From sequence record MT586120.1: a DNA stretch of 64,000 bases. One strand, given 5' to 3'. How positions within the stretch are numbered: position 1 is the first letter of the stretch; each line of letters begins with the position of its first letter. Below, in pieces: positions 3,383 through 56,121 of this stretch. The notes beneath the pieces are model-generated. The model was not told the origin of the DNA. It ran no database searches and was given only the letters and a program-made list of their open reading frames with translations. Made by a program: the position numbers and the translations under genes.

Positions 3383-3437
3383 ATACAACATTATCTATAC
3401 TATACTATATAATACATACACCATTATTATTAATTAA

Positions 3438-3761: not shown

Positions 3762-3806
3762 GTCTTAATTATGTGAAGCGATTAGCACACAGTAAACGCT
3801 TCATAA

Positions 3807-3851: not shown

Positions 3852-3872
3852 GACTACAGTTCAAACAAACTA

Positions 3873-4094: not shown

Positions 4095-4149
4095 CCCCTT
4101 CACAAACCCCCATTAACCTGCTATAATAACTAGGTAATCAATCAAGGAT

Positions 4150-6018: not shown

Positions 6019-6058
6019 ACCATTTGTGCTATAATGTATTTGTAGCAATCCATTTGTA

Positions 6059-9117: not shown

Positions 9118-9118
9118 T

Positions 9119-10683: not shown

Positions 10684-10687
10684 ACCA

Positions 10688-30452: not shown

Positions 30453-30854
30453 ATGAATACTTATGGTTCTCCAGAAGGTTACCTATATAACCTTCATACC
30501 TGCTCCCCATCGGAAGCAAAGAGGATGTGGAAGAAAGCTATTAAAGAACAATGGGGTAATAAATGCGCTTACTGTGGCTCAGATACAAACCTAACATTAG
30601 ATCATATAGTTCCACGTTCAAAAGGAGGTAGTAACCATACAACAAATGTATTATGTGCATGTGAATCATGCAACGCAGACAAAGCATATACTGAATGGAT
30701 CATCTGGTATATCGAACAACCATTCTTCACAGAAGAGCGCCGTGAGGCAATCGAAAAATGGATGTTCCCTACAGAGGAAGTAAATCCAAATCTATTTGTG
30801 CAGGAGCAACCAAAGAGATACTCTTATGGTACCCGCAGAACTAGAGCTTACTGA
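30453..30854 (+). CDS. HNH endonuclease
   Basis: CAYCG...LTLDHIVPRSKGG.N...NVLCACESCNADK. Confidence 0.9.
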   Translation: MNTYGSPEGYLYNLHTCSPSEAKRMWKKAIKEQWGNKCAYCGSDTNLTLDHIVPRSKGGSNHTTNVLCACESCNADKAYTEWIIWYIEQPFFTEERREAIEKWMFPTEEVNPNLFVQEQPKRYSYGTRRTRAY

Positions 30855-31082: not shown

Positions 31083-34000
31083 ATGATTTCATCAGAAACC
31101 AAGATTTTACTTAAGCGTTCTGGCGTTCCAGGACGTATTCCATCCTTAGCGGACCTAAAACTAGGCGAGTTGGGTATCAACTATTATGACGGTAAGGTAT
31201 ACCTCCGTCAAGAAAATGATGTAGTTGGTTCCCGTATCATCGAGCCTGGTCAAGGTGACGATATTGGTAGGACTATTTTCGTAACCGTAAATGGTAACGA
31301 CAACAACTCTGGTCTTAACGAGAGAGACTCTGTAAGAACCATCAAAAAAGCCGCTGAGTTAGCTCAGTTTGGCGATGGTATCAAGGTGTATCCTGGTCAG
31401 TACATCGAAGACAACCCCATTACATTCCGCGATTTGGTTGCGGTTGAGGGTATGGATCTTCGTAACGTCCTAGTTACACCAGCAAACCCAGAGAAAGATT
31501 TATATTTAGTTGGTGACGGTTTCCACGCAACTAACCATTCATTCGTATCAAACCAAGATTCTCGCGATGCTGCCGCGATCATCTCATTCCGCCCTCTAGA
31601 AGGAACCGCATCTGATCGCTACTTTGATGCTGCCCGTCTAATCAGGGACAACCTAAACTTCATTTCAGGCGAAGCTGTAGGTTTCTTGACTAGTGGCTAT
31701 TCAGGCTTTGCTGCTGGTCAAAGATCTCAAGATGCTGCTCGTGCTATTGAACTCAACACAAACTTTATTAGTGAAGAGTCCTTCCAGTATATCAACAGCC
31801 CAGATTATAGGGGTCCAGCATACACTAATCCAGATATCAACCAGTGTCGTAGTGACCTAAAGGATATTCTAGCTGGATGGAGATATGACTTAATCTCTGA
31901 TGGTAACTCCGAGTCAACTGGTGTAGGTCTAACCTACTACGCACCAGTCAAGTTCACCAAGACTACAAATATTACTGACCTAGTTTATGATAACACAACT
32001 GGTTTGTTGGTTATTGAGACTGAACTAAGTACTCAATCACTACCTGGTGATGAGATTAAGCTAAGAGATATTCAACTAGATTGCCCTCCTTATGGTAATT
32101 CATTCCTAATTGCTGGATTTGATTATGATAATGTAAGTGGTGTTGGTACAGTAACTCTACCTTTCATCCACGATATTCAAGCTGGTGATACAATCAAGCT
32201 AGATGATCTCAAGTTTGACTGCCCTCCATATGGCGCTCAAGCATATTCAGTATCTGACTTTGTTTATGATGAGACTACTGGCGGAAGCACAGTAACTCTA
32301 TCAAGTAACCATAACCTTAAAGTTGGTGATGCAATTGAACTCCGCGATATGCAGTTTGATTGCCCAGCTTATGGTGGTACTTTCTCCAACGTTGTAAACA
32401 TTGAGTATAACAATGTAAGTGGAGAAGCAATCCTAACTTATGCGGATGCTGCTGACCTAGACGCTGGTGATGTTGTTCTTCTATATGATATCAAGCTATC
32501 CTGCCCAGCATACGGCAATGCTATTTCAATCACTGGCTTCGATTACGACAACTTTACTGGTATAACACAAGCTTCTTTCGCATCACCTCACGGTCTACGG
32601 GTTGGTGATCTTGTTAAGTTTGAGAACCTTAAGTTTAGCTGTGAGAGCTACTTGAGCGACACTTATAATATCGTTGGATTTGAGTACAACAATCTAACTG
32701 GTGAAGCTCTAGCATCATTCTCTTCTGATCACAACCTAGCTGGTGGAAGTAATGTTGTACTAGACAATCTAACCTTTGCTTGTAATAGCTACTTCCCAGA
32801 AGGAATCAATGTTACTGGATTTAACTACACCAATACAACTGGCGTAAGTACAATCAGCCTAGATCACGCACATAACTTACAGATTGGTGATCGTTTCCAA
32901 CTAGAAGACCTAGTATTTGCTTGTAACAGCTACTCATTCACTGATATTGATGTTACCGCAGCAACTTACGATAACGTTACTGGCTTTGTAAACATCACTC
33001 TAGCTGCTCCTCACGGCAGTTCTGTTGGTGAGTTCGTCAAGCTAGACGGTATTGAGTACTCTTGCCCTGGTGGTTCTGGTATCACAACTACAATCTTCCC
33101 TGATGGAACGATTGGTGATCAGTTTGAGATCCTTTCAGTACCTTCACCTAGTGCTTTGATTGTAAATGTAGGTCCTTCTGCAATCCCACACAGCTATGTT
33201 GGTGGAGGAACTGCTACGGTTGGTATTACTACAACAGTATTCCCTGATGGAACTCAAGGTAATGAGTTTGTTGTAACCGACCTAGTTGACTCCCTAACAT
33301 TGGTAACAAACGTTGGTGTATCTACTATCGCTCACACATATGCTGGTAGTGGTAAGATCTTTGTTGGCTTCACAACAACAGTATTCCCCGATGGAACACA
33401 AGGTAATGTATTCCCAGTTCTAGGAGTACCTGCTGCTAATCAAATAGCACTAAATGTTGGTACTAGCACCATCGAACATACTTATGTTGGTGGTGGTACA
33501 GCTTCTAATGAAGACACATTCCTAAATGTATCTGGCTTCACCTATAACGATGCCGATGGAACTGGATTAGTAACATTGGGTTCCAACCACAACCTAGTTG
33601 TTGGTGATAGTTTCATCCTAGAAGACCTCAAGTTTACTTGTGATAGTTACAGAAATACCGCAAGCACATTTGATATCAGTGACTTCCAGTATGATAATGT
33701 AACTGGTCTATCCACCGTTGTTATCACATCATCTCACGATCTACGGGTCAATGATACGATTGCTCTTTATGATATTGAGTTCTCTTGCCCCAATGGTTCT
33801 GGTATCACAACTACAATCTTCCCTGATGGAAGCGTAGATAACTTCTATGATGTTGTTGCGGTTATTGACCCCAACACAATCATCACTAGAGTCGGTACCT
33901 CCACAATCCCACATTCATATGTTCAGGGTGGTTTGCTTCAGGTTGGTATCACTACTAACATCTTCCCAGATGGAACACGTCCAAGTGATAACTTCTTTGA

Positions 34001-37000
34001 TGTTGTTTCAGTTCCAGCACCTAATCAGATCCTAACTAACGTTGGTTTGAGTTCTATTGCTCATACCTATGCTTCTGGCGGTAAGTTCTACACAGGCATC
34101 ACAACTAATATCTTCCCCCAGACATTTGAAGATCCTAATGTAAAAGTTGTTAATGCCGTATATGATAATGTAACTGGTGCCGTAACAGTCACCTGTGATA
34201 AGCCCCACGGTCTATTAGCTACTAATACAGTACTTCTCCAAGGGCTAGAGTTCTCCTGTGCTTCAGGCGGTCCTGGTGGTGCTCCTGGTGTATTGCTATT
34301 CCCACGTAACCAAGAAACTTATGAGGTTGTATCTGTAGCTACTCCTACAACTTACACCATCAATGTTGGTCCAAACAGCATCCCACATACCTATGTTAGT
34401 GGTGGTATTTCTACTCCACAAAACATCATTGATGCGGTATACAACAGAGCCAACGGAGAACTAACAGTTACTCTAAACAGACAGCACGGATATGTAGCAG
34501 GAGACACTGCTAGTGTTGTTGATTTAGTATTCTCCTGCCTATCTGGTGGAGAAGGTAATGCTCCAGGTGAACTAATCTTCCCTCGTCCTACTGATGAGTT
34601 TGTACTACTATCAATCTCTGGTAGTGAGTTTACTGTAAATGTAGGTGAGTCAAGTGGACTACCCCACACCTATGTAAATGGTGGTTCTGTAAGCTATGCT
34701 GGAACAACCGCACAAGTAACAAGTGCATTATACAATGAAGAGACTGGTGTTCTAACAGTTACAACTAGTGCTCCATTGGGTGCTGCTGTTGATAACGTAG
34801 TCACAATGCAGGGTCTAAACTTTGCTTGTAACTCCGGTGGTCCTGGTAATGACCCAGGCACAATCATCTTCCCACGCCTAGATGTTCCTGTATTCAAAGT
34901 ATCTAAAGTTATCAGTGGCGTAACTTATGTAATCAACGTCGGTACTTCTACTCTAGCACATACTTATGTGTCTGGTGGATTCTCAAGCCTAAAGAAAAAG
35001 GTTAATGATAACAACCTATTCAGAGTATTGGGCGTACCTACTCCCAACACAGTAGTAACTAATGTTGGTGTAAGCTCCATCCCACACACATATGTAAGTG
35101 GTGGTAATGGTTTCGTAGGAATTACAACTAACATCTTCCCTGACGGTACACGCCCTAACGGTAGCCGCTTTGAAGTGTTGAGTGTCCTATCACCTAACAA
35201 GGCAGTCATCAACGTAGGTGTCTCTACAATCCCACACTTCTATGAGAGTGGTGGTCAGGTTCAGTATGGTGAGACAAATGAGCGTCCCATCCTAGCATTT
35301 GATTACAATAACCTAACTGGTGGAGCCAGAGTCACGGTTCGTGGTCCTCACGGTCTATCAGCTGGCGATAGCGTCAAGTTTGATGGTATGGAGTTTGAGT
35401 GTGTTAATAGCCCAGGCATTACAACTACAATCTTCCCTGACGGAACAGCAGCAAGTCTTAACCTCTTCCCTGTAACTGGTGTAGTAAACAACACCGTATT
35501 TGATTGTAATGTTGGACGGGTTCCTTTCACTCACACATATATTCAGGGTGGTTCTGCTTTCGTAGGAATTACAACTAACATCTTCCCTGACGGCACACAA
35601 GGTTATAACTACACTGTTACTGGTGTTCCTTCATCCAATAAGGTCAACGTAAACGTCGGTGTTTCAAGCATCCAACACAACTATGTTCGTGGTGGAGCAC
35701 TATTTGCTGGCGAAACTAACGAGCGTGATATTGTTAACTTCAGCTATGATAATGAGTCTGGTCTAGCTATTCTAACTCTACGTCAGCCTGAAGATTTATA
35801 CACAGGCAACCTTGTTAAGTTGAAGGGGCTTGAGTTTGATTGCCCCGATAGTACTGCTATCACTACAAATATCTTCCCTGATGGTTCACAAGGCTTCCTA
35901 TTCCCAGTCACCGAGAGACTAAATCCAACACAATTCCAGTTGAATATTGGTCGCTCAACAATCCAGCACAACTATGTACGGGGAACTGGCGCAGCATTCG
36001 TTGGTATCACTACTGATATCTTCCCTGACCTATCAACACAACCAACAAAACTATTCAATGTTGTTTCTATCCCTTCACCCAACACCGTTGCGGTTCAGGT
36101 AGGAACTTCCACAATCCCACACAACTATGAGAGTGGTGGAACATTATCCGTTGGTATTAACACAGACATCTTCCCAGGTAGCAGTGTTGTGTCTCCTCTT
36201 GGCGATACATTTGTTATTGATGCCGTCACTTCTTCTGGTGAAATAGTAATTAATGTAGGAACTTCTTCTATCACTCACAACTATGAGCGTGGTGGTCAGG
36301 TTCTATATGGACAGAGTTCTGGTGGAGAGCTACAGCACATCACTGGTCCTGGTGTTATGGATGCGACTATCGCAGCTATTGACTTTGAGCGGCAGATGTC
36401 TAAGTATGTTTTGAATAACCGCCCTTGGGGTTCATTCATTGCTGCTGAAACTGGAATCGTTAATGGTATTGATTATGATAATGTAACTGGCTTCGCTACA
36501 GTAACCGTACCTGGAATCAACGCTCAGCGTGGCGATATGGTAAGGATGAGTGATATTCAGTTCGTATGCTCTGATGAGTACGCTGGACTAACTACCACAT
36601 TCTTCCCAGACAACACACGCCCAGAGGGTCAGTACTTTGAAGTTGAATCTCGTATTGATGAGAACTCATTTGAGACTTTCATTGGTATTTCTTCCATCAA
36701 GCATAATCACTTGAGAGGTGGTAATGTATACCGCTACAGACAAGGTATTGAGAATGTAATCTATGATAGAGCATCTGGTCTAGCTAGTGTAACCTCAATG
36801 GCTCACGGTTATAAGGTTGATGATATCATCGAAATGGGTGATATTAGATTTACCTGCCCAGTATTCACACCTGACTACGACATTGAGAACTTCACATACG
36901 ATAACACAACAGGTTTATCACAAGTAACTACAACAGTTGATAACGATATTCAAATTGGTGATTTGGTTCGCCTAGATGATATCCAACTTGACTGTCCTGC

Positions 37001-40000
37001 TTATGGTAACGAGAGAGTTATTACGGACTTTGAGTACAACAATCTAAACGGTTACTCTGAAATTACAGTAGCATCTCCTCACGGTCTACAACTAAACCCA
37101 AGAACACCAGTAGCAATCACCACCGCAGTTTATGATAATGTAAGTGGTATTGTTACAGTAACTACTGCTGCTCCACTCAACATTGATTTGAGTATCAATA
37201 ACGGAGTTCAGCTAACGGGTCTTGGATTCACCTGTTCTAACTCAACCACAACTACTAATGTTGTTGGTGCTGTATACGATAACACAACTGGTGTTGTAAG
37301 AATCACAACCAACGCAGCTAACAACGCTGCTGTGAGTTCCAAGGTTAAGTTACAGAATCTAATCTTCTCTTGTGAGAGTGGTGGAGTTCCTTCCGATCAG
37401 GCATTCCCAAGTGGTGTTGATGGCTTTGACTTCCTAGTCAGTGAAGTAATCAGCGCAACCGAGTTCAACGCTATCGTTGGAGTCAGCACACTAACTCACA
37501 CATATGTAACTGGCGGAACCGCACAAGTTGGTATCACTACTAACATCTTCCCTAGTGATGATACTCTTATCTACCCAATAACAAATATTGAGAGTAGCAC
37601 TAAGTTCTCACTACAAGTTGGTCCTTCTGCCTTTGCCCACACCTACACGGGTGGTGGTGATGCTACCAAGGTCAATCGTTATAGTGTGAAGCTAGCGGAT
37701 ATTAAGTTTGATTGCCCTGCTTATGGTAATGATATTGGTGTTACTAACTTTATTTACGATAACACATCAGGTAATTCACTAGTAACCGTAGATTCCAATC
37801 ACGGATTGAATGTTGGAGATAGCATTAAGCTAGCCAACCTCAAGTTCCAGTGCCCTCCTTATGGTAATCAGTTCAATGTTATTGCTGCTGACTACGATAA
37901 TGTAACTGGTATCATTACAGTAACAACTGACCGCGACCTAGATGGTATTTCTGTTGATGAAGTATTGAGACTAAGAGATTTACAGTTTGATTGTAACTCT
38001 GGTACTCCCTATGCTATTCAGCAGGTTACTTTCGACCCATTCAATGGTCGTATCGCAACTCTATCACTCGGTCAGAACCCACAGGTCAATCCAGGTGACC
38101 TAATCAAACTAGAAGGTCTTCTATACAGAAATGCTGCTGGTGAGGAAGTTCCATACCCAGACGGTAGAGATGCTAGCTACAATATTTTTGAAGCTCGTTC
38201 AGTAACCCAGGTCAATGCTAGCACTTGGGAAGTTACGGTTCAGTTCAACAATATTACTGATAGCTTGGTAATCTTTATTCCTAATGGATCTAGCTACGGT
38301 ACATTATTCACTGGCGTAACTGGTAACATCTTCCCCGAAAATGTTGGACCAGAAGGTGGCTTCTATAATGTATTGAGCCTACCATCACCTAACCAGTTCG
38401 CAATACAAGTCGGAACCTCAACGATTCCACACACATACATCCGCAATGGTGAAGCATTCTCTGGCGTAACAACCAACTTCTTCCCAAGCACAGACCCACA
38501 GAACTCACCACTAGGTAATCTCTTTGAGGTTGTAGGAGTTCCTACTCCAACACAAGTGAGAATCAATGTAGGCGTATCAAGTATCAGCCACATCTATGAT
38601 TCTGGTGGTCAGCTATTGGTTGGTATCACTACTAACATCTTCCCTGATGGAACACAAGGTAACTTGTTCCCTGTTGTAAGTATCGGTAGTTCCACTGAAC
38701 TCCGCGTCAATGTAGGAACATCTTCTATCCCTCACAACTATATCAGTGGTGGATTGATGTTCGTTGGTATTACTACTAACATCTTCCCTGGTGACCCACA
38801 GAACTCACCACTAGGAAACATCTTTGAGGTTCTTGGTAAGGATGATGATTGTGGTAAGGATCGCTTTACTATCAACGTAGGTGTATCAACTATCCCTCAC
38901 GCATATGTAGAAGGTGGTACGGTAACCACAGGCGTAACTACAAGCCGCTTCCCAGATGGAACCAACGGTTTTGAGTTCCCAGTTGAGAGTGTATTGGACG
39001 CAGACACATTCATTGTTAATGTGGGTCCTTCATCAATCTCTCACACATATGTTGATGGTGGCTATTCTCGCCGCTTGGAGAGCCCAATCAATTCATTCCT
39101 ATATGATAATGTAACTGGTTTCGCTGATGTTGGAATCACTAGCCACAGACTAAACGTCGGTGACCTAGTTAAGCTACGCGATATCAAGTTTGATTGTGAC
39201 CCATATGGTGGTGAGAAGTTCATCAACAATGTAGTATACAACAACCTAACTGGAAGACTAAACGTCAATACTATTGAGCCACACGGTCTATCTCTAAATG
39301 AGACCATCAAGCTCTCTGGTATTCAGATGGACTGCCCTGCTTATGGTAATCAGATTGCTATCACTGGCGCATCATACAGTAATACTACTGGTGTTATTGA
39401 TGTTACAGTCACCCAGGCACACAACCTATCTATTGGCGATAGCGTCAAGCTAGATGGTTTAGATTTCGTATGCCCTGGTGGTTCTGGTATCACAACTACA
39501 ATCTTCCCTGACGGAACAGCAGCAAGCTACAACATCTATGAAGTTGTATCAGTACCTGCTGCGAATAGCCTAACAGTAAATGTAGGAACCTCAACGATTC
39601 CACACACATATACAGGCGGCGGAAACATCTTCGTTGGTATCACTACCAACATCTTCCCAGGCAGCGCACAGAACTCACCACGCGGTAGCTTCTTCGAGGT
39701 TCTAGACACTCCATCAATTACAGAGTTCACTCTAAATGTTGGCGTATCTTCCATCGCTCACGGATATATTCGCGGCGGTTTCGTTCAGACTGGTGTAACA
39801 ACAGACATCTTCCCTGACGGAACACAAGGTGATTACTTCCAGGTTGGTGAGATTATTGACGAAGATAACTTCACAATCGATGCTGGTATCTCATCAATCA
39901 CTCACAGATATAACTCTGGTGGTTATGGTGCTAAGTATGTTACTTATCAGGCAAGAACACCACAGGTTGTCGATACATCAGTAATCCGCGTAAGCGGTGG

Positions 40001-43000
40001 CTGTAAGGCAGCTGAAGCTCGTGTAGATCAGTTGGCTGGGATTGTAACCTCTATCATACAGAACGGTCCTTCAGCGGCTCCTGGTGATGTCCCACTTAAC
40101 GTAGTGGCTGCTTCTTATAACAAGCAGACTGGTGACCTATCAGTAACAACCTCAGGTGAGACTGGCGTTGCTCCTGTGGATACAGTTAAGATTGAGAATC
40201 TAATCTTCCAGTGTAGCAAGGTAAGCAATGTTATTGGTGCTACCTATGATAACACAACAGGCAAAGCTATCATCACAACAGATGATGACAACGGCATCAG
40301 TATCGGCACCAAGATTAGATTGGAGGGACTAAACTTCGCTTGTAATGACGGAAGCCTAGTATATCCTTCAGATCCAAATACGGTGTTTGATGTTATTGTT
40401 GTTCTAGGAGACAATAGATTTGAGCTTGACTTGGCTAAGTCAACAAAAGTTCATACTTGGACTGGTGGTGGTGTTTGTACTACGGTACCTACAACACGCA
40501 CATTCCCAGACAATAAAGTATTCATCTACAATGTTAAGTCTGTTCTATCACCAACAACATTTACTGTAAATGTAGGTCCTTCTGATATCGATCATTCATA
40601 TATCAGTGGCGGTCACGTATCACCAGGTCTACGCTACCAGGTTGATAACGCAGAATACAATAAGATTACTGGTCTTCTAACAGTAACTACCGATGTTGAT
40701 AATCAACTCATAGCAAATACTGGAGTCAAGCTAAATGACTTACAGTTCTCCTGTACTTCAGGTGGTGCTAACAATCAGCCAGGTATTCTACCATTCCCAG
40801 ATGGTCGTCCAGCTAACGTTGTGGCTGCTACTTATAATAATGTAACAGGTCTTCTTCGTGTTACTACAGATAAGCCTCATCAAGCATACGCAGATGTTAA
40901 GGTTCGCCTAGAAGGACTTGAGTTCTCCTGCCCAGGTGGTTCACTCATCTACCCAAGCAATCCTAATCAGTTGCTTCGCGTAACTAAAGTAGAAGACTTC
41001 TATACATATGAAGTTCTACTTGAGCCATCATCAAAAGTACATACTTATGTTCAGGGTGGAACATCTAGCACAGGAACGAACCACTATTGCGTAGATTCTG
41101 TAATCAACTCACGCACATTTACAGTACAAATGGCTCCAAACAACCTAACTCACACATATGTGAGTGGTGGTACGGTTGCTTCAGTATTCTGTGAACAGAT
41201 TCTAACTGGAATCAACCTACGCACAGCCAAGTGTGCTGATGATGTGAAGAAGATTTACCTAGCAGTTGTTCACGATGTTACTCGTGGCGGTAATATGAAG
41301 TCCGTTGCGGCAGCTAGAAAGTACTACGACGCAGTTGGTCAGTATCAGCACATTGCTGGTGGTGAAGTCAACCAGACCGTAGCGGCACTAGACTACTCAC
41401 TAAATGTCGTTCGCTGTGTAATCAATAACGTATCTTGGGGTGGCGTTCCACGTGGCTACTTCACTTCAAGGGAGAGAGCATTCATCCCAACCAAGTCAAA
41501 CCTAGACGCACCTTTGGCTAACAGGTCACTATCAAGAGACCTACTACGCCTAGCGGATATGCCTCCTTCAACAACACAATCTGTTGTTTGTATTGAGAAG
41601 CCTTTCGAGAAGGGTCAGTATACAACCAATAAGAAGTTTATTGAGGCATTTGACTACGATAACGTCACTGGTATTGCTTCAGTTACTACTACCCAGGCAC
41701 ACCGCCTAATCAAGTATGACGCAATCCGCCTAGATGATATCAAAATGCGTTGTGTTGGTAGTCCAAGAATCACCACAAATCTATTCCCAGATGGAACTCA
41801 AGGTGATATCTTCGAGGTCAAGCAAACCTTCCAGGATAATCCAATCTATCCAGTAAGTGATGCTACTTATAACAATACCACTGGTAATCTACTTGTCGAG
41901 TCTCTCGGTAGTAATCTAGAACTTGAAGTAGGAACTCTAGTTAACCTACGCAACTTGAGATTTGAGTGTAGTTCATCTGGTGCTCCAGGCACTATCGTCT
42001 ATCCAACAAACTCAGATTATGTATATGAGGTTAAGAAGATTATCAACGGAGATACAATCCTAGTCAACGTTGGTGTATCAACTCTGGTACATACCTTTGT
42101 CCCAACATCAACTACTTTCAATGTACCTCAGTTCCAAGAGCTTCCTAGAAAGTTCATCGCTCACGTAGGAACAGTTGGTTTCCCACATATCTACGAGCAA
42201 GGTGGAACTGTATGGAAGCAAGAGCCATTCCAAACTCCAGAAAGTGCTACCCAGTTGCGCGATGTATCAATTCAAAATGATCCGTTACAGTTTACCAATA
42301 GCACACCTAATGCTTGTGCGAATGTCTTCTCCGCCATTGAGAATACAGTTGGCGTTGTAACAACAATCATCGATGTTGGGTTTGAAGATTCTGGTATCTC
42401 TGTTAGGTATCCAGGTAATGATGGTAGGGGTGTTGATTCATTCGATCAAATGTCCTCACAGGGTGTCGGTAACATCATCAGGGGTCCATACATCCGTAAC
42501 TGCACGAACTTTGTTCCTAAGTCAATCGGTATGAGAATGGACGGTTTCGATGCTGAACCAGGCGATGAAATCTCCAACGGTGTTCAAGGTTCATCTAACG
42601 TTGACTCATTCACCCAGTTTAACCCAGGCGGTATTGGTTGTTCCGTATCAAATGGTACCTACCAGCAGCTCGTTTCTATCTTCACCATCTGTTGTGACCA
42701 GGCTATTGTTTGTGACTCAGGCGCACAGCTTGACCTTACAAACTCTAACAGCTCCTTCGGACGCTTAGGTCTAGTCGCTCGCGGTATTGGTGATGCTAAG
42801 TCCAAGTGTATTGACCGCTACACGGGTATCGTTGCTGAGGAAGCCCAAATTGAAGATGATACAGTCATCATCCGGGGAGTGGGCGAGAAGCGCCCTTATG
42901 ACGGTCAAGGAATCTTCTTTGGAGAACTCTTCCGCGAAGTTATCCGAATCGATGTTACTGATGGGGGTTCTGGTTATGATGACGAGAATCCACCAGTAGC

Positions 43001-43589
43001 AACGGTAGATCTTCCCACTGGTCCTTCAGGTATTAAAGCTGAGGTATCACCAACAGTCCTAGACGGTGAGGTTGTTTCCATTGAACTTATCTCAAATGGT
43101 AACCAGTACAGAGACATTAGTCCAACTGTAACTATCGCACCACCAAGAGATCCTGAAGGCAGACAAGCTAAAGCTGTTGCGATCACAGAGCCTATCTACT
43201 ATGACGTTGATAGTTCATCTGCTCCAGTAGAAGGAACTGTGAGAGTCGTATTCAAACAGAGGCTAAATAATACAGTATCTGTAGGCACCACTGTATTCTT
43301 CTCTCGCCTAAGTCTACAAATCGCATCCTCACACTCCTTCGAGTACATCGGATCCGGTAATGAGATCAACGGCGCGAGACCTTCACAGGGCGGTGTTCCT
43401 ATTAAGGCTAATGAGATCGTTAAGCAGGAAGGCGGTTCTATCGTCTACACCTCAACCGATCAGGCAGGTAACTTTAACATCGGTGATGACTTCGTAATCA
43501 ACCAGTTCACTGGTACAGTTACGGGTAGGTCCTTCGACCAATCGGTGCTAAATAAGGTAACGCCACTAATCATCGCATTGGATAGCTAA
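31083..43589 (+). CDS. Giant (4168 aa) tail fibre/adhesin with split beta-helix, helical domains and 33 nested beta-modules
   Basis: N-terminal LLKRSGVPGRIP...LGELGINYYDGKVY fibre motif; FVTVNGNDNNSG...RTIKKA beta-helix start; PYIRNCT...DSFTQFN...LVSIFT beta-helix end; repeats in between. Confidence 0.85.
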   Translation: MISSETKILLKRSGVPGRIPSLADLKLGELGINYYDGKVYLRQENDVVGSRIIEPGQGDDIGRTIFVTVNGNDNNSGLNERDSVRTIKKAAELAQFGDGIKVYPGQYIEDNPITFRDLVAVEGMDLRNVLVTPANPEKDLYLVGDGFHATNHSFVSNQDSRDAAAIISFRPLEGTASDRYFDAARLIRDNLNFISGEAVGFLTSGYSGFAAGQRSQDAARAIELNTNFISEESFQYINSPDYRGPAYTNPDINQCRSDLKDILAGWRYDLISDGNSESTGVGLTYYAPVKFTKTTNITDLVYDNTTGLLVIETELSTQSLPGDEIKLRDIQLDCPPYGNSFLIAGFDYDNVSGVGTVTLPFIHDIQAGDTIKLDDLKFDCPPYGAQAYSVSDFVYDETTGGSTVTLSSNHNLKVGDAIELRDMQFDCPAYGGTFSNVVNIEYNNVSGEAILTYADAADLDAGDVVLLYDIKLSCPAYGNAISITGFDYDNFTGITQASFASPHGLRVGDLVKFENLKFSCESYLSDTYNIVGFEYNNLTGEALASFSSDHNLAGGSNVVLDNLTFACNSYFPEGINVTGFNYTNTTGVSTISLDHAHNLQIGDRFQLEDLVFACNSYSFTDIDVTAATYDNVTGFVNITLAAPHGSSVGEFVKLDGIEYSCPGGSGITTTIFPDGTIGDQFEILSVPSPSALIVNVGPSAIPHSYVGGGTATVGITTTVFPDGTQGNEFVVTDLVDSLTLVTNVGVSTIAHTYAGSGKIFVGFTTTVFPDGTQGNVFPVLGVPAANQIALNVGTSTIEHTYVGGGTASNEDTFLNVSGFTYNDADGTGLVTLGSNHNLVVGDSFILEDLKFTCDSYRNTASTFDISDFQYDNVTGLSTVVITSSHDLRVNDTIALYDIEFSCPNGSGITTTIFPDGSVDNFYDVVAVIDPNTIITRVGTSTIPHSYVQGGLLQVGITTNIFPDGTRPSDNFFDVVSVPAPNQILTNVGLSSIAHTYASGGKFYTGITTNIFPQTFEDPNVKVVNAVYDNVTGAVTVTCDKPHGLLATNTVLLQGLEFSCASGGPGGAPGVLLFPRNQETYEVVSVATPTTYTINVGPNSIPHTYVSGGISTPQNIIDAVYNRANGELTVTLNRQHGYVAGDTASVVDLVFSCLSGGEGNAPGELIFPRPTDEFVLLSISGSEFTVNVGESSGLPHTYVNGGSVSYAGTTAQVTSALYNEETGVLTVTTSAPLGAAVDNVVTMQGLNFACNSGGPGNDPGTIIFPRLDVPVFKVSKVISGVTYVINVGTSTLAHTYVSGGFSSLKKKVNDNNLFRVLGVPTPNTVVTNVGVSSIPHTYVSGGNGFVGITTNIFPDGTRPNGSRFEVLSVLSPNKAVINVGVSTIPHFYESGGQVQYGETNERPILAFDYNNLTGGARVTVRGPHGLSAGDSVKFDGMEFECVNSPGITTTIFPDGTAASLNLFPVTGVVNNTVFDCNVGRVPFTHTYIQGGSAFVGITTNIFPDGTQGYNYTVTGVPSSNKVNVNVGVSSIQHNYVRGGALFAGETNERDIVNFSYDNESGLAILTLRQPEDLYTGNLVKLKGLEFDCPDSTAITTNIFPDGSQGFLFPVTERLNPTQFQLNIGRSTIQHNYVRGTGAAFVGITTDIFPDLSTQPTKLFNVVSIPSPNTVAVQVGTSTIPHNYESGGTLSVGINTDIFPGSSVVSPLGDTFVIDAVTSSGEIVINVGTSSITHNYERGGQVLYGQSSGGELQHITGPGVMDATIAAIDFERQMSKYVLNNRPWGSFIAAETGIVNGIDYDNVTGFATVTVPGINAQRGDMVRMSDIQFVCSDEYAGLTTTFFPDNTRPEGQYFEVESRIDENSFETFIGISSIKHNHLRGGNVYRYRQGIENVIYDRASGLASVTSMAHGYKVDDIIEMGDIRFTCPVFTPDYDIENFTYDNTTGLSQVTTTVDNDIQIGDLVRLDDIQLDCPAYGNERVITDFEYNNLNGYSEITVASPHGLQLNPRTPVAITTAVYDNVSGIVTVTTAAPLNIDLSINNGVQLTGLGFTCSNSTTTTNVVGAVYDNTTGVVRITTNAANNAAVSSKVKLQNLIFSCESGGVPSDQAFPSGVDGFDFLVSEVISATEFNAIVGVSTLTHTYVTGGTAQVGITTNIFPSDDTLIYPITNIESSTKFSLQVGPSAFAHTYTGGGDATKVNRYSVKLADIKFDCPAYGNDIGVTNFIYDNTSGNSLVTVDSNHGLNVGDSIKLANLKFQCPPYGNQFNVIAADYDNVTGIITVTTDRDLDGISVDEVLRLRDLQFDCNSGTPYAIQQVTFDPFNGRIATLSLGQNPQVNPGDLIKLEGLLYRNAAGEEVPYPDGRDASYNIFEARSVTQVNASTWEVTVQFNNITDSLVIFIPNGSSYGTLFTGVTGNIFPENVGPEGGFYNVLSLPSPNQFAIQVGTSTIPHTYIRNGEAFSGVTTNFFPSTDPQNSPLGNLFEVVGVPTPTQVRINVGVSSISHIYDSGGQLLVGITTNIFPDGTQGNLFPVVSIGSSTELRVNVGTSSIPHNYISGGLMFVGITTNIFPGDPQNSPLGNIFEVLGKDDDCGKDRFTINVGVSTIPHAYVEGGTVTTGVTTSRFPDGTNGFEFPVESVLDADTFIVNVGPSSISHTYVDGGYSRRLESPINSFLYDNVTGFADVGITSHRLNVGDLVKLRDIKFDCDPYGGEKFINNVVYNNLTGRLNVNTIEPHGLSLNETIKLSGIQMDCPAYGNQIAITGASYSNTTGVIDVTVTQAHNLSIGDSVKLDGLDFVCPGGSGITTTIFPDGTAASYNIYEVVSVPAANSLTVNVGTSTIPHTYTGGGNIFVGITTNIFPGSAQNSPRGSFFEVLDTPSITEFTLNVGVSSIAHGYIRGGFVQTGVTTDIFPDGTQGDYFQVGEIIDEDNFTIDAGISSITHRYNSGGYGAKYVTYQARTPQVVDTSVIRVSGGCKAAEARVDQLAGIVTSIIQNGPSAAPGDVPLNVVAASYNKQTGDLSVTTSGETGVAPVDTVKIENLIFQCSKVSNVIGATYDNTTGKAIITTDDDNGISIGTKIRLEGLNFACNDGSLVYPSDPNTVFDVIVVLGDNRFELDLAKSTKVHTWTGGGVCTTVPTTRTFPDNKVFIYNVKSVLSPTTFTVNVGPSDIDHSYISGGHVSPGLRYQVDNAEYNKITGLLTVTTDVDNQLIANTGVKLNDLQFSCTSGGANNQPGILPFPDGRPANVVAATYNNVTGLLRVTTDKPHQAYADVKVRLEGLEFSCPGGSLIYPSNPNQLLRVTKVEDFYTYEVLLEPSSKVHTYVQGGTSSTGTNHYCVDSVINSRTFTVQMAPNNLTHTYVSGGTVASVFCEQILTGINLRTAKCADDVKKIYLAVVHDVTRGGNMKSVAAARKYYDAVGQYQHIAGGEVNQTVAALDYSLNVVRCVINNVSWGGVPRGYFTSRERAFIPTKSNLDAPLANRSLSRDLLRLADMPPSTTQSVVCIEKPFEKGQYTTNKKFIEAFDYDNVTGIASVTTTQAHRLIKYDAIRLDDIKMRCVGSPRITTNLFPDGTQGDIFEVKQTFQDNPIYPVSDATYNNTTGNLLVESLGSNLELEVGTLVNLRNLRFECSSSGAPGTIVYPTNSDYVYEVKKIINGDTILVNVGVSTLVHTFVPTSTTFNVPQFQELPRKFIAHVGTVGFPHIYEQGGTVWKQEPFQTPESATQLRDVSIQNDPLQFTNSTPNACANVFSAIENTVGVVTTIIDVGFEDSGISVRYPGNDGRGVDSFDQMSSQGVGNIIRGPYIRNCTNFVPKSIGMRMDGFDAEPGDEISNGVQGSSNVDSFTQFNPGGIGCSVSNGTYQQLVSIFTICCDQAIVCDSGAQLDLTNSNSSFGRLGLVARGIGDAKSKCIDRYTGIVAEEAQIEDDTVIIRGVGEKRPYDGQGIFFGELFREVIRIDVTDGGSGYDDENPPVATVDLPTGPSGIKAEVSPTVLDGEVVSIELISNGNQYRDISPTVTIAPPRDPEGRQAKAVAITEPIYYDVDSSSAPVEGTVRVVFKQRLNNTVSVGTTVFFSRLSLQIASSHSFEYIGSGNEINGARPSQGGVPIKANEIVKQEGGSIVYTSTDQAGNFNIGDDFVINQFTGTVTGRSFDQSVLNKVTPLIIALDS

Positions 43590-43593: not shown

Positions 43594-43944
43594 ATGGCAG
43601 CAGTAGCACTAAACAAATTTCTAACGGTAAGACATTTGGTTACCGACTCCAATGTGGGGATTTATACCTCCCCCATTGGTGTTGCTTCCATCGTTCTTTT
43701 TGCCCAGGCAACGAACGTGTCTTCCGATGGTGAAGTAAAATTCGTCACCTTTTCTCACGCCAGACCAGGTGATATACCAGTGGATTTTCAAATTATCAAT
43801 GATGGTCCAGTCATCCCCAACGATGCACTGAACCTAATTATTGGTAGACTTGTCCTGGAAACAGGAGATGAGTTAATCCTTTCAGGCGATACGACCGGAG
43901 ATGTGAAGGTTGTAGTCTCTATTCTCGAAACAGCTAAGAGCTAA
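43594..43944 (+). CDS. Small conserved virion-associated protein
   Basis: IYTSPIGVASIVLFAQATN...LVLETGDEL...VSILETAK; CTAAATA near 43548. Confidence 0.7.
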   Translation: MAAVALNKFLTVRHLVTDSNVGIYTSPIGVASIVLFAQATNVSSDGEVKFVTFSHARPGDIPVDFQIINDGPVIPNDALNLIIGRLVLETGDELILSGDTTGDVKVVVSILETAKS

Positions 43945-43973: not shown

Positions 43974-46900
43974 ATGGCATTATTTTATCAGTCAGGCAGA
44001 GTAAGTAGATTCGCAGTAGGTACACCTGGGTTTTCAACCAACAGGGACCTAACTCTTAATGTGTCTGGCGCTATTGGTATTGAAACTACTAAACCTAGGG
44101 GGAGCATTGATACTCCAGAGATTAGTATTAGAGGACCAATTATTGACTCAGGAATCAATACAGGTGGTTTAGGATATTTCTTATCACAGGATGTAGAAGG
44201 TGTTAAGTGGGTTGCTGCTTCACCAGAAGACTTAACATTTATTAGAGTATTTGAAGATAATGTACAGGTTGGCGTTAGTTCCTTCAGTGGACTAAACTTC
44301 ATATCAAATGACTCTTCATTATTTGATATTAAAGAAAGTCCAATTGGTCCCAATATTGCGGACATTAATTTTAATACATACTGGATTAGAACCGAGTATG
44401 GTAATAACGCAGGTATTTCAACTGGTTATGGACCAGACGGCACCTATGCTTCCCTCCCTGGTTATGGAACCAGCGAAGCAGTAGGTGTTACTTCTGTTGG
44501 TATTGGAACAGACAATCCACAAGATGACTTCCAAGTTGGTATTGGATCCACTGGTGTTACTATCAATGGACCTGAAGGTAAGCTAGAAGCAGAAATTATT
44601 AAAGCCAAGAACCTTGAGCTTGATGGTAATATTACTGTTAGATCACTAGTTGTTGATCCAGGTATTGCTACATTCCGTGGAAATATTGATGCTCAAGGTA
44701 TCTCTAGCTTCACTGGGGATGTTATAGCTGGGTTCGCTACTATACAGGAGCTATATGTAAATGATTTAGAGGTTGAATTATTCAGGGCAGGTGTATCAAC
44801 ATTAGGTTTTGGACAATCGGCATCTTCATTTACTATTGTAGAGAATAGTTTAGAGGTTCAGGGTGCTATTGGTACATTTATCAATGATCTATATGTCGGA
44901 AATGACCTTTATGTTGCTGGTGATACATTCTTCAACCAGATCAATGCCGAAAATATTCAAGTAACAGGCATTGCGACATTAAATAATGTTGAAGGAAACA
45001 CGGGGATCTTCACTAGCTTTGAAGTAACAGGGATCACCACACTAAATCAGCTTGAGTTTAATACGGGAGTAGGTACTGATTTACAGTTAGAGTCTTCAAC
45101 TATTGGTGTATTAACAGCGACTGATGTTAGTGCTGGTGTTGCTACTATTGGCTTTGCTAATATTGATGATGCTAATATCAGTGGTATCGTAACAGTAACC
45201 GAAGTTGATGTAGAAGAGATTGATATTGAGCGTGCCCAAGTAGGCATCCTAACAATCACTGAGGGTCTATCAGTAACTGGTACCAGTACCTTTGTTGGTC
45301 TAGTAACCGTAACTGGCGACGCATTCATTGATGGTGACCTAACAGTTACTGATCAGTTCACAGTACAAGATCTAGGAGCAGAGAACCTAGAAGTAACTGG
45401 TATTGGTACCATTGTAAATCTAGAATCTAATGTTGGTATTATCACCACATTGTTCACAGAAGGTTCTGTTAATACTGGTGTTGGTACATTCAATGTTGTT
45501 GAAGCCAATGATATTCAGTCAGGCACTGGTACTATTGGTGGTGTTGGCTTTGAGTCTGGTAGGCTAGAGGGAACTGAACTAGATTTTGATATTGGTCGCA
45601 TCGGTATTCTAACTGGTGACCTACTCAGTTATGGTATTGGTACATTTAGAGATAGGCTAGACAGCCCAGGCATCTCTAATATTGCCGTTGCTATTGGTAA
45701 TACTCTAAACTATGATAGCACATCACAGATTAATGGTGTTACATTTGGTGATGAGTTAGTAGATATATTCAATAGAGACCTAAGAGTAACTGGCATAACA
45801 ACCTTTACTGGTGTGGGTACATTCGGATCAGATCTATATGTAAAAGAAGATCTATTTGTTGGTGGTGAACTAAGTTTTGAACAACTAACAGGTACCAACC
45901 TACAGGTTCTAGGTATCGCAACAGTTAATCAACTAGATCTAAACACAGGTATTGGTACCTTCCTAGACCTAGAGTTCCTACAAGTTGGTGTTGCTACTAT
46001 CACCAACCTACTAGGAACGATCTCAACAATCACCAGAATGGACTCTGGTACTGTTGCTGTTACTACTGATCCAGGTAAATATCCAACATCAGACGGTCAG
46101 TTCTATGCTGATAGATCATTCATTGAATTTTCTAATGCCCTTGATAGTCGCACCACAGACTTTGTTGCTAGAGAAACAGCAGACATCCAAGGTACATTAG
46201 AAGTTGTTGGTCTATCAACATTCGATTCTGATATTGATGTAAACGCAGATATCAATGTATCTGGTCTAACTACAACCAACTTCCTATTCGCTGGCGTAGG
46301 TACAATCCTACTATTAGATACAGACTTCATTGACTCTGATGAGATCAACGCAGGTATCATTACAACCCAAGATTTAGTTGTTACAGGTTCTGCTGACTTC
46401 CAAGGAGATGTTGTTGTAGACATCGGTGGTACAGCTAATATCACCAACGCAAACATTGGGTTCGCTAGCGTCACTGAGGAGGTCGTAGGAACCTCTACAG
46501 TAGGCTTCTTGAGTGCTACTGATGCGAACATCGGCGTAGCAACTGTCGGGCTTCTAAGCGCCACAGATGCAGAGATAGAAGACCTTGAGGTTAATACATT
46601 CCGTGCTGGTATTGCTACGGTAGGCTTCGGTTCATTCGGCACTGATCCAAATGAAGGTTCCCTATATGTAACGGGTATCAATACATTTGTTGGCTTCACT
46701 ACATTCACTGGAGAGGTTTATGTTGATGGTGACCTAACAGTATCAGGTATTACAACATTCAAGCAGTTGGATGCGGAACAATCACAGATTGGTATCCTAA
46801 CCACCAAGACTCTACTAGATTCTAATGGTCTAATCGACGCAGAGAATGTTGCTATCAGCACAAACCTAACAGTTTCTGGTCTAACAACTCTAACTGGATT

Positions 46901-49577: not shown

Positions 49578-49638
49578 TTTATACCGTATAAATACATTCA
49601 TACAATATAATTTTTAATTATAGGGGGAATGTGAACCC

Positions 49639-53763: not shown

Positions 53764-53781
53764 GTTGGATAAATAGTAATT

Positions 53782-53805
53782 AAGGCTATACTATAGCCTT
53801 TTTTT
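53782..53805 (+). terminator. Intrinsic terminator
   Basis: AAGGCTATA-C-TATAGCCTT plus T-run. Confidence 0.7.
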
Positions 53806-53846
53806 GCGCGTACAAGAAGACTATAAACTAAGAGGAAAAAAAACTA

Positions 53847-55916: not shown

Positions 55917-55922
55917 TATATT

Positions 55923-55945
55923 AGGAACCTTCGGGTTCCTTTTTT
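55923..55945 (+). terminator. Intrinsic terminator with UUCG loop
   Basis: AGGAACC-TTCG-GGTTCCT, T-run. Confidence 0.85.
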
Positions 55946-55952
55946 ATAAATA

Positions 55953-56013
55953 ACATTGGGTGTCTCCCACCCGTGTTGTTGGTAAGACTACAACTACCCT
56001 TAGGGGTTTTTTT
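55953..56013 (+). ncRNA. Candidate late small RNA
   Basis: Between TATAAATA (55945) and CCC-TTAG-GGG plus T7 (55997-56013); hairpins GGGTG/CACCC and GTTGT/ACAAC; no SD-led ORF. Confidence 0.35.
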
Positions 56014-56121
56014 ATGCTTAAAAATAGAAATCTTAATGTGTATAAATATAGATGAATTGAAACAAAGCTACATATAATTCTTCGTTAGTCTTACCAAAAG
56101 CAAACACGGGGAAAAAAACAC

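What the first reader, a model, noticed from the sequence alone, without database searches (positions are those of the whole stretch)
31260..42780. Outer nesting levels: split helical domains inside a beta-helix interrupted by about 3600 aa
Seen: QCRSDLKDIL...YDLISDGNSES...LTYY (ends 31940) resumes after block 1 as ELQHITG...TIAAIDF...VLNNRPWG, matching the uninterrupted copy KCADDVKKIY...HDVTRGGNMKS...KYYDAVGQYQHIAGG...TVAALDY...VINNVSWG (about 41226-41440). Its last part (Q..D.S.....C......I..IVT.II) follows block 2 and block 4. The beta-helix start (to IISFRP, about 31590) continues only at GPYIRNCT (about 42480). Inference: three hierarchical insertion levels, with the N- and C-terminal beta-helix halves forming one domain.
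Basis: partly seen in the sequence, partly recalled or inferred. Interest (0 to 1): 0.7.

Follow-up and report, generated by a model that had tools for sequence, protein, structure and literature searches.

The report
Nested phage fibre with phycobiliprotein-like domains
One intact 4168-residue tail-fibre-type gene of the marine cyanophage S-CAM7 is built like a Russian doll: a tailspike-like beta-helix is split by a 3621-residue insert, and the "helical domains" in that insert are relatives of the host's light-harvesting phycobiliproteins that keep both pigment-attachment cysteines.

Summary
The whole region is one uninterrupted ORF (31083..43589, +) of Synechococcus phage S-CAM7. Natural short homologues supply every nesting level. 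A 527-aa protein has the two beta-helix halves only 10 residues apart. Others add one contiguous helical domain. The syntenic S-T4 orthologue (836 aa) adds one A+B repeat unit inside that domain. Family profiles match the window's pieces as exactly complementary halves: beta-helix profile 7-113 / 108-466, helical profile 2-35 / 36-66. In-script joins give single gapless full-length matches.

New here: the helical domain is a phycobiliprotein-like globin. A profile of 114 contiguous copies hits only phycocyanins and phycoerythrins in the PDB (best E 7.5e-6). 29 of 114 copies hit Pfam PF00502. An AlphaFold model (pLDDT 93.6) finds phycobiliproteins as its top structural matches. The bilin-site Cys..Asp and the beta-155-type Cys are its most conserved residues. 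The module occurs in 173 of 50,697 phage records, all cyanophages.

The two copies are probably nested in each other, not side by side. Function is inferred: a virion fibre or baseplate protein. Bilin binding is untested.

The parts
31083..43589 (+). Single intact ORF, 4168 aa (S-CAM7 QLF86304.1, annotated 'hypothetical protein')
31083..31256 (+). N-terminal ~58-residue module shared with homologous fibre-type proteins of other cyanophages
   Evidence: Nt hits. Not shared with neighbouring ORFs in the window.
31257..31598 (+). Beta-helix, N-terminal part (res 59-172)
   Evidence: Matches positions 7-113 of the uninterrupted-core profile. Contiguous with the C part in P0053 and 11 other proteins.
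31617..31688 (+). H0a (res 179-202): phycobiliprotein helices A/B equivalent. Probably belongs to the OUTER globin domain.
31722..31793 (+). H0b (res 214-237): second A/B hairpin. Probably belongs to the INNER (split) globin domain.
31842..31943 (+). H1 (res 254-287): first half of the E-F-G helix segment of the inner domain. Carries Cys255..Asp258 (CRSD) at the phycobiliprotein Cys84 site (Cys codon 31845-31847).
   Evidence: Profile H12 positions 2-35; motif
31944..36320 (+). Block 1 (res 288-1746): 15 A and 15-16 B repeats, inserted in the F-G loop of the inner domain
36321..36431 (+). H2 (res 1747-1783): second half of the E-F-G segment of the inner domain
   Evidence: Profile H12 positions 36-66; z 12.7 against the uninterrupted copy
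36432..39971 (+). Block 2 (res 1784-2963): A/B repeats plus an unexplained 61-aa island (res 2350-2410), inserted in the G-H loop of the inner domain
39972..40067 (+). H3 (res 2964-2995): G-H loop end and helix H of the inner domain, with Cys2974 (codon 40002-40004)
   Evidence: Profile H3 positions 12-43; S-T4 HSP reaching 2995
40068..41228 (+). Block 3 (res 2996-3382): A A B B A A B B, between the two globin units
41229..41441 (+). H12' (res 3383-3453): contiguous E-F-G segment of the outer domain, with Cys3384..Asp3387 (CADD; Cys codon 41232-41234)
   Evidence: Profile H12 positions 2-66, 69.3 bits
41442..42251 (+). Linker and block 4 (res 3454-3723), in the G-H loop of the outer domain. 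One B repeat appears split by an inserted A+B.
42252..42380 (+). H3' (res 3724-3766): G-H loop end and helix H of the outer domain, with Cys3745 (codon 42315-42317)
   Evidence: Profile H3 positions 1-43, 50 bits
42462..43586 (+). Beta-helix, C-terminal part, plus C-terminal beta domains (res 3794-4168)
   Evidence: Uninterrupted-core profile positions 108-466, 451 bits; 1344 homologues in the representative search

Best explanation
SHOWN. This is one gene for a very large structural-type protein of cyanomyovirus S-CAM7, assembled by recursive domain insertion.

- The host domain is a tailspike/polysaccharide-lyase-like right-handed beta-helix (res 59-172 plus 3794 onward, followed by C-terminal beta domains).
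- A surface loop after its first ~110 residues carries a 3621-residue insert.
- The insert holds two phycobiliprotein-like globin domains (helices A/B = H0, E-F-G = H12, H = H3).
- Arrays of a ~95-residue A+B module sit in the F-G loop (block 1) and in the G-H loops (blocks 2 and 4).

INFERRED from family grammar and orthology.
- The two globin domains are nested: H0a [ H0b H1 blk1 H2 blk2 H3 blk3 ] H12' blk4 H3'.
- A and B are two halves of one small beta-barrel, with an insertion hot spot between them. Each array is therefore a closed nest whose ends meet, which an inserted segment needs.

INFERRED function.
- It is a virion fibre or baseplate-attached protein.
- The conserved beta-helix core and C-terminus provide assembly and/or glycan binding.
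- The looped-out domain arrays enlarge reach and avidity for the host surface.
- Array length evolves quickly by duplication: 836 aa in S-T4, 3090 in an ACG-2014f-like relative, 4057-4168 in S-CAM7.
- The globin domains act at least as insertion hubs. Whether they still bind bilin is open.
For: Identity and integrity.

Repeats and architecture.

Natural forms for each nesting level:
- P0053 (527 aa): beta-helix halves 10 residues apart.
- Twelve cores of 467-487 aa.
- P0025, P0015, P0004: one contiguous helical domain.
- S-T4 gp074 (syntenic) and P0008: an added A+B unit.
- P0023: three units.

Complementary profile matches and gapless joins.

The split pieces are conserved in two diverged orthologues although block sizes differ. 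Against P0001 the pieces are 69-88% identical, versus 50-64% for the blocks.

Structure:
- The model of P0008:439-1223 aligns to single-domain beta-helices over residues 9-770 at Z 17-20.
- Its residues 113/118-381 align to phycobiliprotein beta chains at Z ~15, rmsd 2.3-2.7 A, skipping the A+B insert.
- A contiguous module folds with pLDDT 93.6 and pTM 0.90.

Phycobiliprotein relationship:
- Profile against PDB sequences: all 60 listed hits (of 142 at E<=10) are phycobiliproteins or biliprotein-like, including all 52 at E<=0.001; best E 7.5e-6.
- PF00502 is hit above its gathering score in P0151 and hit by 29 of 114 modules.
- The Foldseek top 50 and the top 8 of an unbiased scan of 48,161 chains are all phycobiliprotein family.
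- CxRD is present in 177 of 264 copies and CxxD in 243 of 264. The H3 Cys is present in 169 of 169.

Nesting grammar:
- The number of H0 equals the number of H12 in 29 of 32 proteins, with the H0 copies clustered first.
- In 11 of 11 single-unit relatives the unit is closest to the giant's first H0, last H12 and last H3. Nine multi-unit relatives show the same pattern.
- A/B words: 30 of 54 are balanced, and all 30 are properly nested; 10.4 are expected by chance.

Context: neighbours match tail-fibre and baseplate-wedge PHROGs. Homologues are annotated as virion structural, tail fibre or gp7 proteins.
Against: - No structure of the window's own protein could be predicted. Folding evidence comes from natural relatives with 45-55% identity in the core.
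Packing of the two beta-helix halves, and of H12 with H3, is inferred from collinear structural alignments and confidence scores, not from measured contacts.
- Nested versus crossed pairing of the two H0 hairpins rests on counts and similarity only.
- 24 of 54 A/B words are unbalanced, possibly from missed repeats. Block 2 does not close, and a 61-residue island is unexplained.
- The window's own copies do not reach Pfam PF00502, and they have CRSD and CADD instead of CxRD.
- Virion location and function are by annotation of homologues only; no proteomic or imaging evidence was found.
Confidence: 0.85

Rival explanations
1. The short helical pieces (H1, H2, H3) are dead remnants left by recombination between repeat-rich fibre genes. 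They do not reassemble into domains, and only the last copy and the beta-helix are functional.
For: The pieces are short (32-37 aa). The copy-to-copy match of the third piece is weak (z 2.9). The window's motifs deviate from CxRD.
Against: - The pieces are exactly complementary on the family profile (2-35 | 36-66), and the join scores 57.7 bits.
- All three are retained in orthologues whose block 1 differs by ~780 residues.
- They are more conserved than the flanking blocks.
- The Cys and Asp are kept.
- Insertion in the G-H loop is the rule in dozens of relatives.
Confidence: 0.05
2. The pieces do fold into globin and beta-helix domains, but between chains of an oligomer (3D domain swapping) or with crossed pairing (H0a with the first unit, H0b with the last). 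It would then not be an intrachain nest.
For: Tailspike-like beta-helix proteins are usually trimers (general knowledge). Sequence alone cannot tell intra- from inter-chain pairing. The grammar o^n(E..h)^n is also compatible with crossed pairing.
Against: - Orthology: the first H0 and the last H12/H3 track the single ancestral unit in 11 of 11 and about 9 of 9 comparisons. This fits insertion of a whole unit between H0 and H12.
- Monomer models of natural relatives fold the pieces intrachain with good confidence.
Confidence: 0.1
3. The helical domain is merely a generic globin-like helical bundle. Its resemblance to phycobiliproteins is convergent or too remote to mean anything, and the conserved cysteines serve disulfides or metal binding in an extracellular protein.
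For: - The structural Z of ~15 is near the level that helical models reach by chance (tool note).
- Foldseek E-values are only 3e-3.
- Almost every A repeat also has an invariant Cys, so conserved Cys is a general trait of this protein.
- No bilin-synthesis or lyase gene was seen in S-CAM7.
Against: - Sequence-only evidence is independent of the fold: all 52 PDB profile hits at E<=0.001 are phycobiliproteins (or a biliprotein-like fluorescent protein).
- A curated Pfam model hits above its own threshold, and 29 of 114 modules hit it, against 3 or fewer for any other family.
- The aligned columns place the family's two most conserved cysteines on the Cys84 (CxRD) and beta-155 sites.
- The module is restricted to cyanophages.
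Confidence: 0.1

Closest known systems
Synechococcus phage S-T4 gp074 (YP_009810832.1, 836 aa, 'putative major tail protein') and metagenomic relatives P0053, P0025 and P0008
   Same: Same N-terminal module, same beta-helix halves, same C-terminus (46% identity over 585 columns). Same synteny: followed by a ~115-aa ORF and a large fibre gene. Same insertion point. One globin unit with one A+B in its G-H loop.
   Different: The window's protein has a second globin unit, an extra insertion site in the F-G loop, and about 68 A/B repeats instead of 2. It is five times longer.
Phage tailspikes and polysaccharide lyases with a right-handed parallel beta-helix (Sf6 and CBA120 TSP1 tailspikes, K1 capsule lyase, PL6/PL9 lyases, RbmB, AlgE4)
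   Same: Fold of the core: Z 17-20, 220-280 residues aligned across both halves of the model of a relative. Phage fibre context.
   Different: No sequence-level match to any solved structure. Catalytic residues and oligomeric state were not assessed. No known tailspike carries an insert of thousands of residues in one loop, to my knowledge.
Phycobiliproteins (Pfam PF00502; phycocyanin, phycoerythrin, allophycocyanin, ApcE) and the wider bilin-binding globins (BBAGs, PMC10151467)
   Same: Globin-type helices A, B, E, F, G, H. A CxRD-type motif at the Cys84 position. A second Cys at the beta-155 position before helix H. Profile, Pfam and structural matches.
   Different: No X-Y N-terminal hairpin: structural matches start at chain residue ~21-30. 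The domain is embedded in, and interrupted by, other domains of a phage structural protein, and is often arrayed in tandem. The window's motifs are CRSD and CADD. Chromophore binding is untested.
Known inserted beta-barrels: endosialidase beta-barrel (PF12195) and the E1 FCCH domain (PF16190)
   Same: The A+B unit gives weak Pfam hits to both. ~100-column Foldseek matches to Uba1 and endosialidases appear for the model that contains it. Both known domains are themselves insertions in a host domain (general knowledge).
   Different: The matches are weak (E 0.01-0.1). That the Foldseek hits fall on the A+B region is my inference. No known case of this barrel being nested in itself many times.

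Membership tests
Right-handed parallel beta-helix (pectate-lyase-like / tailspike) fold | Continuous stack of beta-helix rungs formed by one chain segment; structural match to solved members | tested here: met
   The model of relative P0008:439-1223 aligns over residues ~9-770 to single-domain beta-helices at Z 17-20. The window aligns to the uninterrupted-core profile as 7-113 / 108-466. This was tested on a relative, not on the window's own chain.
Right-handed parallel beta-helix (Pfam Beta_helix / DUF1565) | Pfam model at gathering score | tested here: not met
   No Pfam family for the window protein at E<=0.1. A relative, P0162, reaches DUF1565 at 24.7 bits against a cut-off of 20.3.
Phycobiliprotein (PF00502) | Pfam PF00502 at gathering score | tested here: not met
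   The window's own copies give no hit. Family member P0151 scores 28.4 bits against a cut-off of 22.2, and 29 of 114 modules hit at E<1. The link to the window is transitive, through the family profile.
Phycobiliprotein (PF00502) | Globin-type fold, helices A-B-E-F-G-H | tested here: met
   The module model (pLDDT 93.6) has six helices. Its top structural matches are phycoerythrin beta, ApcE and allophycocyanin: Z 11.5-15.2, 118-150 residues, rmsd 1.9-2.8 A.
Phycobiliprotein (PF00502) | CxRD bilin-attachment motif (PMC10151467) | tested here: inconclusive
   Family: CxRD in 177 of 264 copies and CxxD in 243 of 264. Window: CRSD (res 255-258) and CADD (res 3384-3387). Cys and Asp are kept, Arg is not.
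Phycobiliprotein (PF00502) | N-terminal X-Y helix hairpin that builds the alpha-beta monomer | tested here: not met
   Profile and structural alignments start at phycobiliprotein residue ~21-37. No extra N-terminal helices are present in the module.
Phycobiliprotein (PF00502) | Covalently bound bilin chromophore | not testable with these tools
   Needs expression with bilin synthesis, or spectroscopy and mass spectrometry of virions.
Nested domain insertion | Natural homologues exist with the host domain uninterrupted, and the flanks of the insert are complementary on the host-domain profile | tested here: met
   Met for the beta-helix. Met for the globin G-H loop: 114 contiguous H12-H3 modules against AB-interrupted ones. 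Met for the globin F-G loop.
Phage tail fibre / baseplate structural protein | Presence in the virion | not testable with these tools
   Only context is available: flanking tail-fibre and baseplate-wedge PHROGs, and annotation of homologues as structural, tail fibre or gp7.

The most novel reading that the evidence does not exclude
The phycobiliprotein-like domains of this and related cyanophage fibre and baseplate proteins still bind bilin covalently, at the Cys84-type and beta-155-type cysteines, using pigment made by the infected cyanobacterium. The virion would then carry chromophores.

This would give a phage-side candidate for the unexplained light dependence of cyanophage adsorption. 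[quoted passage not shown]

The module is found only in cyanophages. Carriers include S-PM2 and P-HM1, two phages for which PMC6628666 reports light-dependent adsorption.
Probability: 0.2. Interest if true: 0.95.

Novelty: new variant of a known kind. Interest (0 to 1): 0.8.

Why it matters
1. This is an unusually clean natural series. Every intermediate form was found, from 527 to 4168 residues. It shows how a giant protein is built by repeatedly inserting whole domains into loops of other domains, with mutual nesting of three domain types. That is useful for understanding, and for annotating, the many 'hypothetical' giant genes of marine phages.

2. It identifies a host-type light-harvesting fold inside virion-type proteins. 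The fold keeps both of its pigment-attachment cysteines and is restricted to cyanophages. I found no paper that describes this.

3. If the domains bind bilin, the long-standing question of why some cyanophages adsorb only in the light becomes directly testable. If they do not, this is still a striking case of a photosynthetic antenna protein being co-opted as a structural hub.

Tried and rejected
- Pfam on the whole protein, and on isolated helical modules one by one, gave nothing useful. Only the profile and the all-member scan exposed PF00502.
- Single-sequence PDB searches with the N- and C-terminal parts, and a profile of the beta-helix alignment, gave no real hit.
- A profile of the A+B unit against PDB and Pfam gave only weak hints.
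- The ESM Atlas feature search on the module returned beta-helix clusters, apparently from the context of the whole protein. It was uninformative.
- The giant's N-terminal module is not shared with neighbouring fibre ORFs.
- I looked for bilin genes (heme oxygenase, PebS/PcyA, CpeT) in the S-CAM7 annotation for 1-150 kb and by Pfam scans of the larger (>=150-aa) non-fibre window ORFs, and saw none. About 6 kb between 150 kb and the window start was not checked.
- The two S-CAM7 papers I opened (of 12 hits) do not discuss this gene.
- Rejected: assembly artefact (four isolates, diverged DNA repeats).
- Rejected: intein- or intron-like removable inserts (no such families found; the inserts are ordinary repeat domains also found elsewhere in the family).
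- I did not submit an in-silico joined sequence to the structure tool, because it accepts natural sequences only.

Full report
**What the window is.** The window is the right-hand 64 kb of Synechococcus phage S-CAM7, a T4-like cyanomyovirus (Kyanoviridae, Mazuvirus). It is 100% identical to MT586120.1 and 99.5-99.6% identical to three other records, which represent two further isolates. The finding lies wholly inside one stop-free ORF, 31083..43589 (+), 4168 aa, deposited as 'hypothetical protein'. Neighbouring large ORFs match tail-fibre and baseplate-wedge PHROGs.

**Checking the observation.**
- Residues 288-3723 are dominated by two repeat types, 34 copies each:
  - type A, ~38 aa, motif Y-D-N-x-T-G ... 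F-x-C;
  - type B, ~44 aa, motif G-I-T-T-x-I-F-P-D-G ... N-V-G-x-S-x-I-x-H-x-Y-x-x-G-G.
- Four non-repeat islands interrupt the repeats.
- The split helical copy matches the 'uninterrupted' copy well beyond chance. 254-289 aligns to 3383-3418 at z 7.0, and 1748-1783 aligns to 3419-3453 at z 12.7. No shuffle out of 2000 reaches either score, and the two matches abut.
- The third piece is weak copy-to-copy (z 2.9). A family profile finds it at 2964-2995 and at 3724-3766. It is also part of an HSP with S-T4 gp074.
- Internal DNA repeats are only 60-80% identical, so the gene is neither a repeat-collapse nor a chimeric assembly.

**Short homologues.** An exhaustive search with residues 3745-4168 found 1344 relatives. 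Their lengths run from ~500 to 4057 aa, and the matched domain sits at the C-terminus in nearly all. Annotating the best 150 with module queries gave a complete series.
- Twelve proteins have an uninterrupted core of 467-487 aa. In P0053 (527 aa) the sequence reads ...AVIAFDP-10 residues-PYVRNCTNF..., where the window has ...AIISFRP-3621 residues-GPYIRNCTNF.
- P0025, P0015 and P0004 have one contiguous helical domain at that site.
- S-T4 gp074 (836 aa) and P0008 have one A+B unit between the second and third parts of the helical domain. S-T4 gp074 is syntenic: it is followed by a ~115-aa ORF and a large fibre gene, as in the window.
- P0023 has three such units.

**Alignment across the junctions.** A profile of the uninterrupted cores matches the giant as 64-173 = profile 7-113 and 3786-4166 = profile 108-466. 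A join made only inside a script (172|3794) gives one gapless alignment of 558.9 bits. The helical profile (264 domain copies from 79 proteins) matches 254-287 as positions 2-35 and 1747-1779 as positions 36-66. Joined, it scores 57.7 bits over positions 2-66.

**Conservation of the pieces.** The same three pieces occur in two diverged orthologues whose blocks differ in size. Against P0001 they are better conserved than the blocks, 69-88% versus 50-64%.

- P0008:439-1223 has the arrangement beta-helix N / H0 / H12 / A+B / H3 / beta-helix C. Its model has pLDDT 81.5 and pTM 0.67.
- Single-domain right-handed beta-helix proteins align to model residues ~9-770 at Z 17-20. These include rhamnogalacturonan lyase, K1 capsule lyase, AlgE4, RbmB, PL6 lyases, and the CBA120 and Sf6 tailspikes. 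The alignments cross the insert.
'One beta-helix' rests on these collinear alignments, not on measured contacts.

**What the helical domain is.**
- In the same model, residues 113/118-381 align to phycobiliprotein beta subunits, skipping the A+B insert at 237-333: Z ~15, 139-146 residues, rmsd 2.3-2.7 A.
- 114 modules in the family have H12 directly followed by H3. This settles that H12+H3 is one domain and that A+B units between them are insertions.
- A profile of these modules, searched against PDB sequences, returns only phycocyanin and phycoerythrin chains plus one biliprotein-like 'bacterial fluorescent protein'. This holds for all 60 listed hits (of 142 at E<=10), including all 52 at E<=0.001; the best E is 7.5e-6.
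- In those alignments H0 lies on helices A/B. The family's K-C-x-R-D-I-G lies on the Cys84 site (K-C-A-R-D-I-G-Y in CpcA). The H3 motif ...n-s-C-a-d-V-q-s-a-I... lies on the beta-subunit ...G-D-C-S-A-L-A-S-E-I..., the beta-155 site.
- Pfam's PF00502 model hits family member P0151 above its gathering score, and hits 29 of 114 modules. No other family is hit by more than 3.
- A contiguous module folds with pLDDT 93.6 and pTM 0.90 into six helices. Its Foldseek top 50 are all phycobiliproteins.
- In a Foldseek-independent scan of 48,161 chains the top eight are phycoerythrin, ApcE and allophycocyanin (Z 11.5-15.2). Sensor globins, RsbR and photoglobins come next.
- The two cysteines and the Asp are the most conserved residues: the H3 Cys in 169 of 169 copies, CxxD in 243 of 264, and CxRD in 177 of 264. 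CxRD is the published bilin-attachment motif (PMC10151467).
- The window has CRSD and CADD.
- By tblastn the module occurs in 173 of 50,697 phage records, all of them Synechococcus or Prochlorococcus phages. The genes are annotated virion structural, gp7 baseplate wedge, or tail fibre.
- I found no paper that describes this.

**Where the inserts sit.** I mapped them onto the module model.
- Block 1 lies in the loop between helices F and G. This site is used only in the S-CAM7 / ACG-2014f lineage among the proteins examined.
- Blocks 2 and 4 lie in the long G-H loop, the common site.
- The whole helical region lies in a beta-helix loop after ~110 residues.
- Other family members use a second beta-helix site about 100 residues further on. 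The window's protein does not.

- In 29 of 32 proteins with units at this site, the number of H0 hairpins equals the number of H12 segments. The hairpins come first, in tandem: o o E h E AB h, o o o E..h E..h E..h.
- In 11 of 11 single-unit relatives the unit is most similar to the giant's first H0, last H12 and last H3. Nine multi-unit relatives show the same.
- The simplest reading is that a whole unit was inserted between helices B and E of the ancestral unit. The order would then be H0a [ H0b H1 blk1 H2 blk2 H3 blk3 ] H12' blk4 H3'. On this reading the 'uninterrupted' copy is itself split by ~3180 residues.
- This is inference. Crossed or inter-chain pairing is not excluded.

**The A and B repeats.** A and B behave like opening and closing brackets.
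- 30 of 54 proteins have equal numbers of A and B. All 30 are properly nested words, against 10.4 expected by chance.
- Globin units often sit between an A and a B.
- Block 1 closes exactly if a 19-residue orphan B fragment is set aside.
- Block 2 does not close, and it contains an unexplained 61-residue island.
- Weak Pfam hits (E1 FCCH and the endosialidase beta-barrel) and ~100-column Foldseek matches suggest that A+B is one small beta-barrel. Both of those known barrels also occur as insertions.

**Mechanism and function (inferred).** The conserved N-terminal module, beta-helix and C-terminus probably provide attachment, assembly and possibly glycan binding or cleavage, as in tailspikes. 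The looped-out arrays multiply the surface and reach available for host contact, and they change length quickly between phages. A preprint reports that S-CAM7 associates unusually strongly with host type IV pili, but no link to this gene is known (10.1101/2025.09.20.677514).

**Is bilin bound?** This is open.
- For: both attachment cysteines and the Asp are conserved, and the module is restricted to cyanophages.
- Against: the Arg is lost in the window's copies, nearly every A repeat also has an invariant Cys, and no bilin gene was seen in S-CAM7.
- Light-dependent adsorption of some cyanophages remains unexplained and has been attributed to host receptors and/or tail fibres (PMC6628666). That is why the possibility deserves a test.

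**Verdict.** The architecture is a new variant of known principles (domain insertion, the tailspike beta-helix, the phycobiliprotein fold), in an unusually deep and well-documented form. The phycobiliprotein-like domain in virion-type proteins is, as far as I could find, undescribed.

Noticed in passing
window 30453-30854 (+): A 133-aa ORF with strong HNH-endonuclease PHROG matches (best E 1.4e-34) sits directly upstream of the giant gene. It may be a homing-endonuclease-type mobile element beside a fast-evolving fibre gene.
   Followed up: no
window 5143-13422 (+): A cluster of sugar-nucleotide and glycosyltransferase genes lies just before the fibre genes. Members: GDP-mannose 4,6-dehydratase, epimerase, DegT aminotransferase, GT11, GT8, GT25, a methyltransferase and a LicD-like protein.
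   Followed up: no
window 43594-43944 (+): A 116-aa ORF (phrog_1276, unknown function) immediately follows the giant gene. A 113-aa ORF follows the short orthologue in S-T4 in the same way (L002:11506-11847). It may be a conserved partner or assembly factor.
   Followed up: partly
window 38130-38312 (res 2350-2410): A 61-residue non-repeat island lies inside block 2, preceded by a partial A repeat (res 2318-2349). It matches neither the helical domain nor the repeats, and block 2 does not form a closed A/B nest around it.
   Followed up: partly
window 41769-42206 (res 3563-3708): One B repeat appears to be split by an inserted A+B unit. Residues 3563-3589 match B-profile positions 2-25, and residues 3674-3708 match positions 24-44, with A (3593-3631) and B (3636-3675) between them.
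   Followed up: no
whole ORF 31083-43589: The protein has 50 cysteines. 33 of the 34 A repeats carry one Cys in an F-x-C motif, which is an odd number per repeat for a presumably extracellular protein. Their role (inter-domain disulfides, metal, other) is unknown.
   Followed up: no
window 43974-57258 (+): Three further large ORFs (1867, 1374 and 689 aa) match baseplate-wedge and long-tail-fibre-distal PHROGs and share C-terminal modules. ORF 56122-57258 ends in a Peptidase_S74 intramolecular-chaperone domain.
   Followed up: no
relatives P0070, P0038, P0132, P0146, P0138 (not in the window): Other family members place A/B units, or up to about ten tandem phycobiliprotein-like modules, at a second site ~100 residues into the C-terminal beta-helix half. 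Some carry the modules N-terminal of the beta-helix instead.
   Followed up: partly
S-CAM7 genome outside the window (NC_031927.1 70002-82946): There is a second giant gene (4314 aa, 'baseplate wedge subunit'). In P-HM1 the phycobiliprotein-like module hits the gp7 baseplate-wedge gene, so the module may be spread over several structural genes.
   Followed up: no
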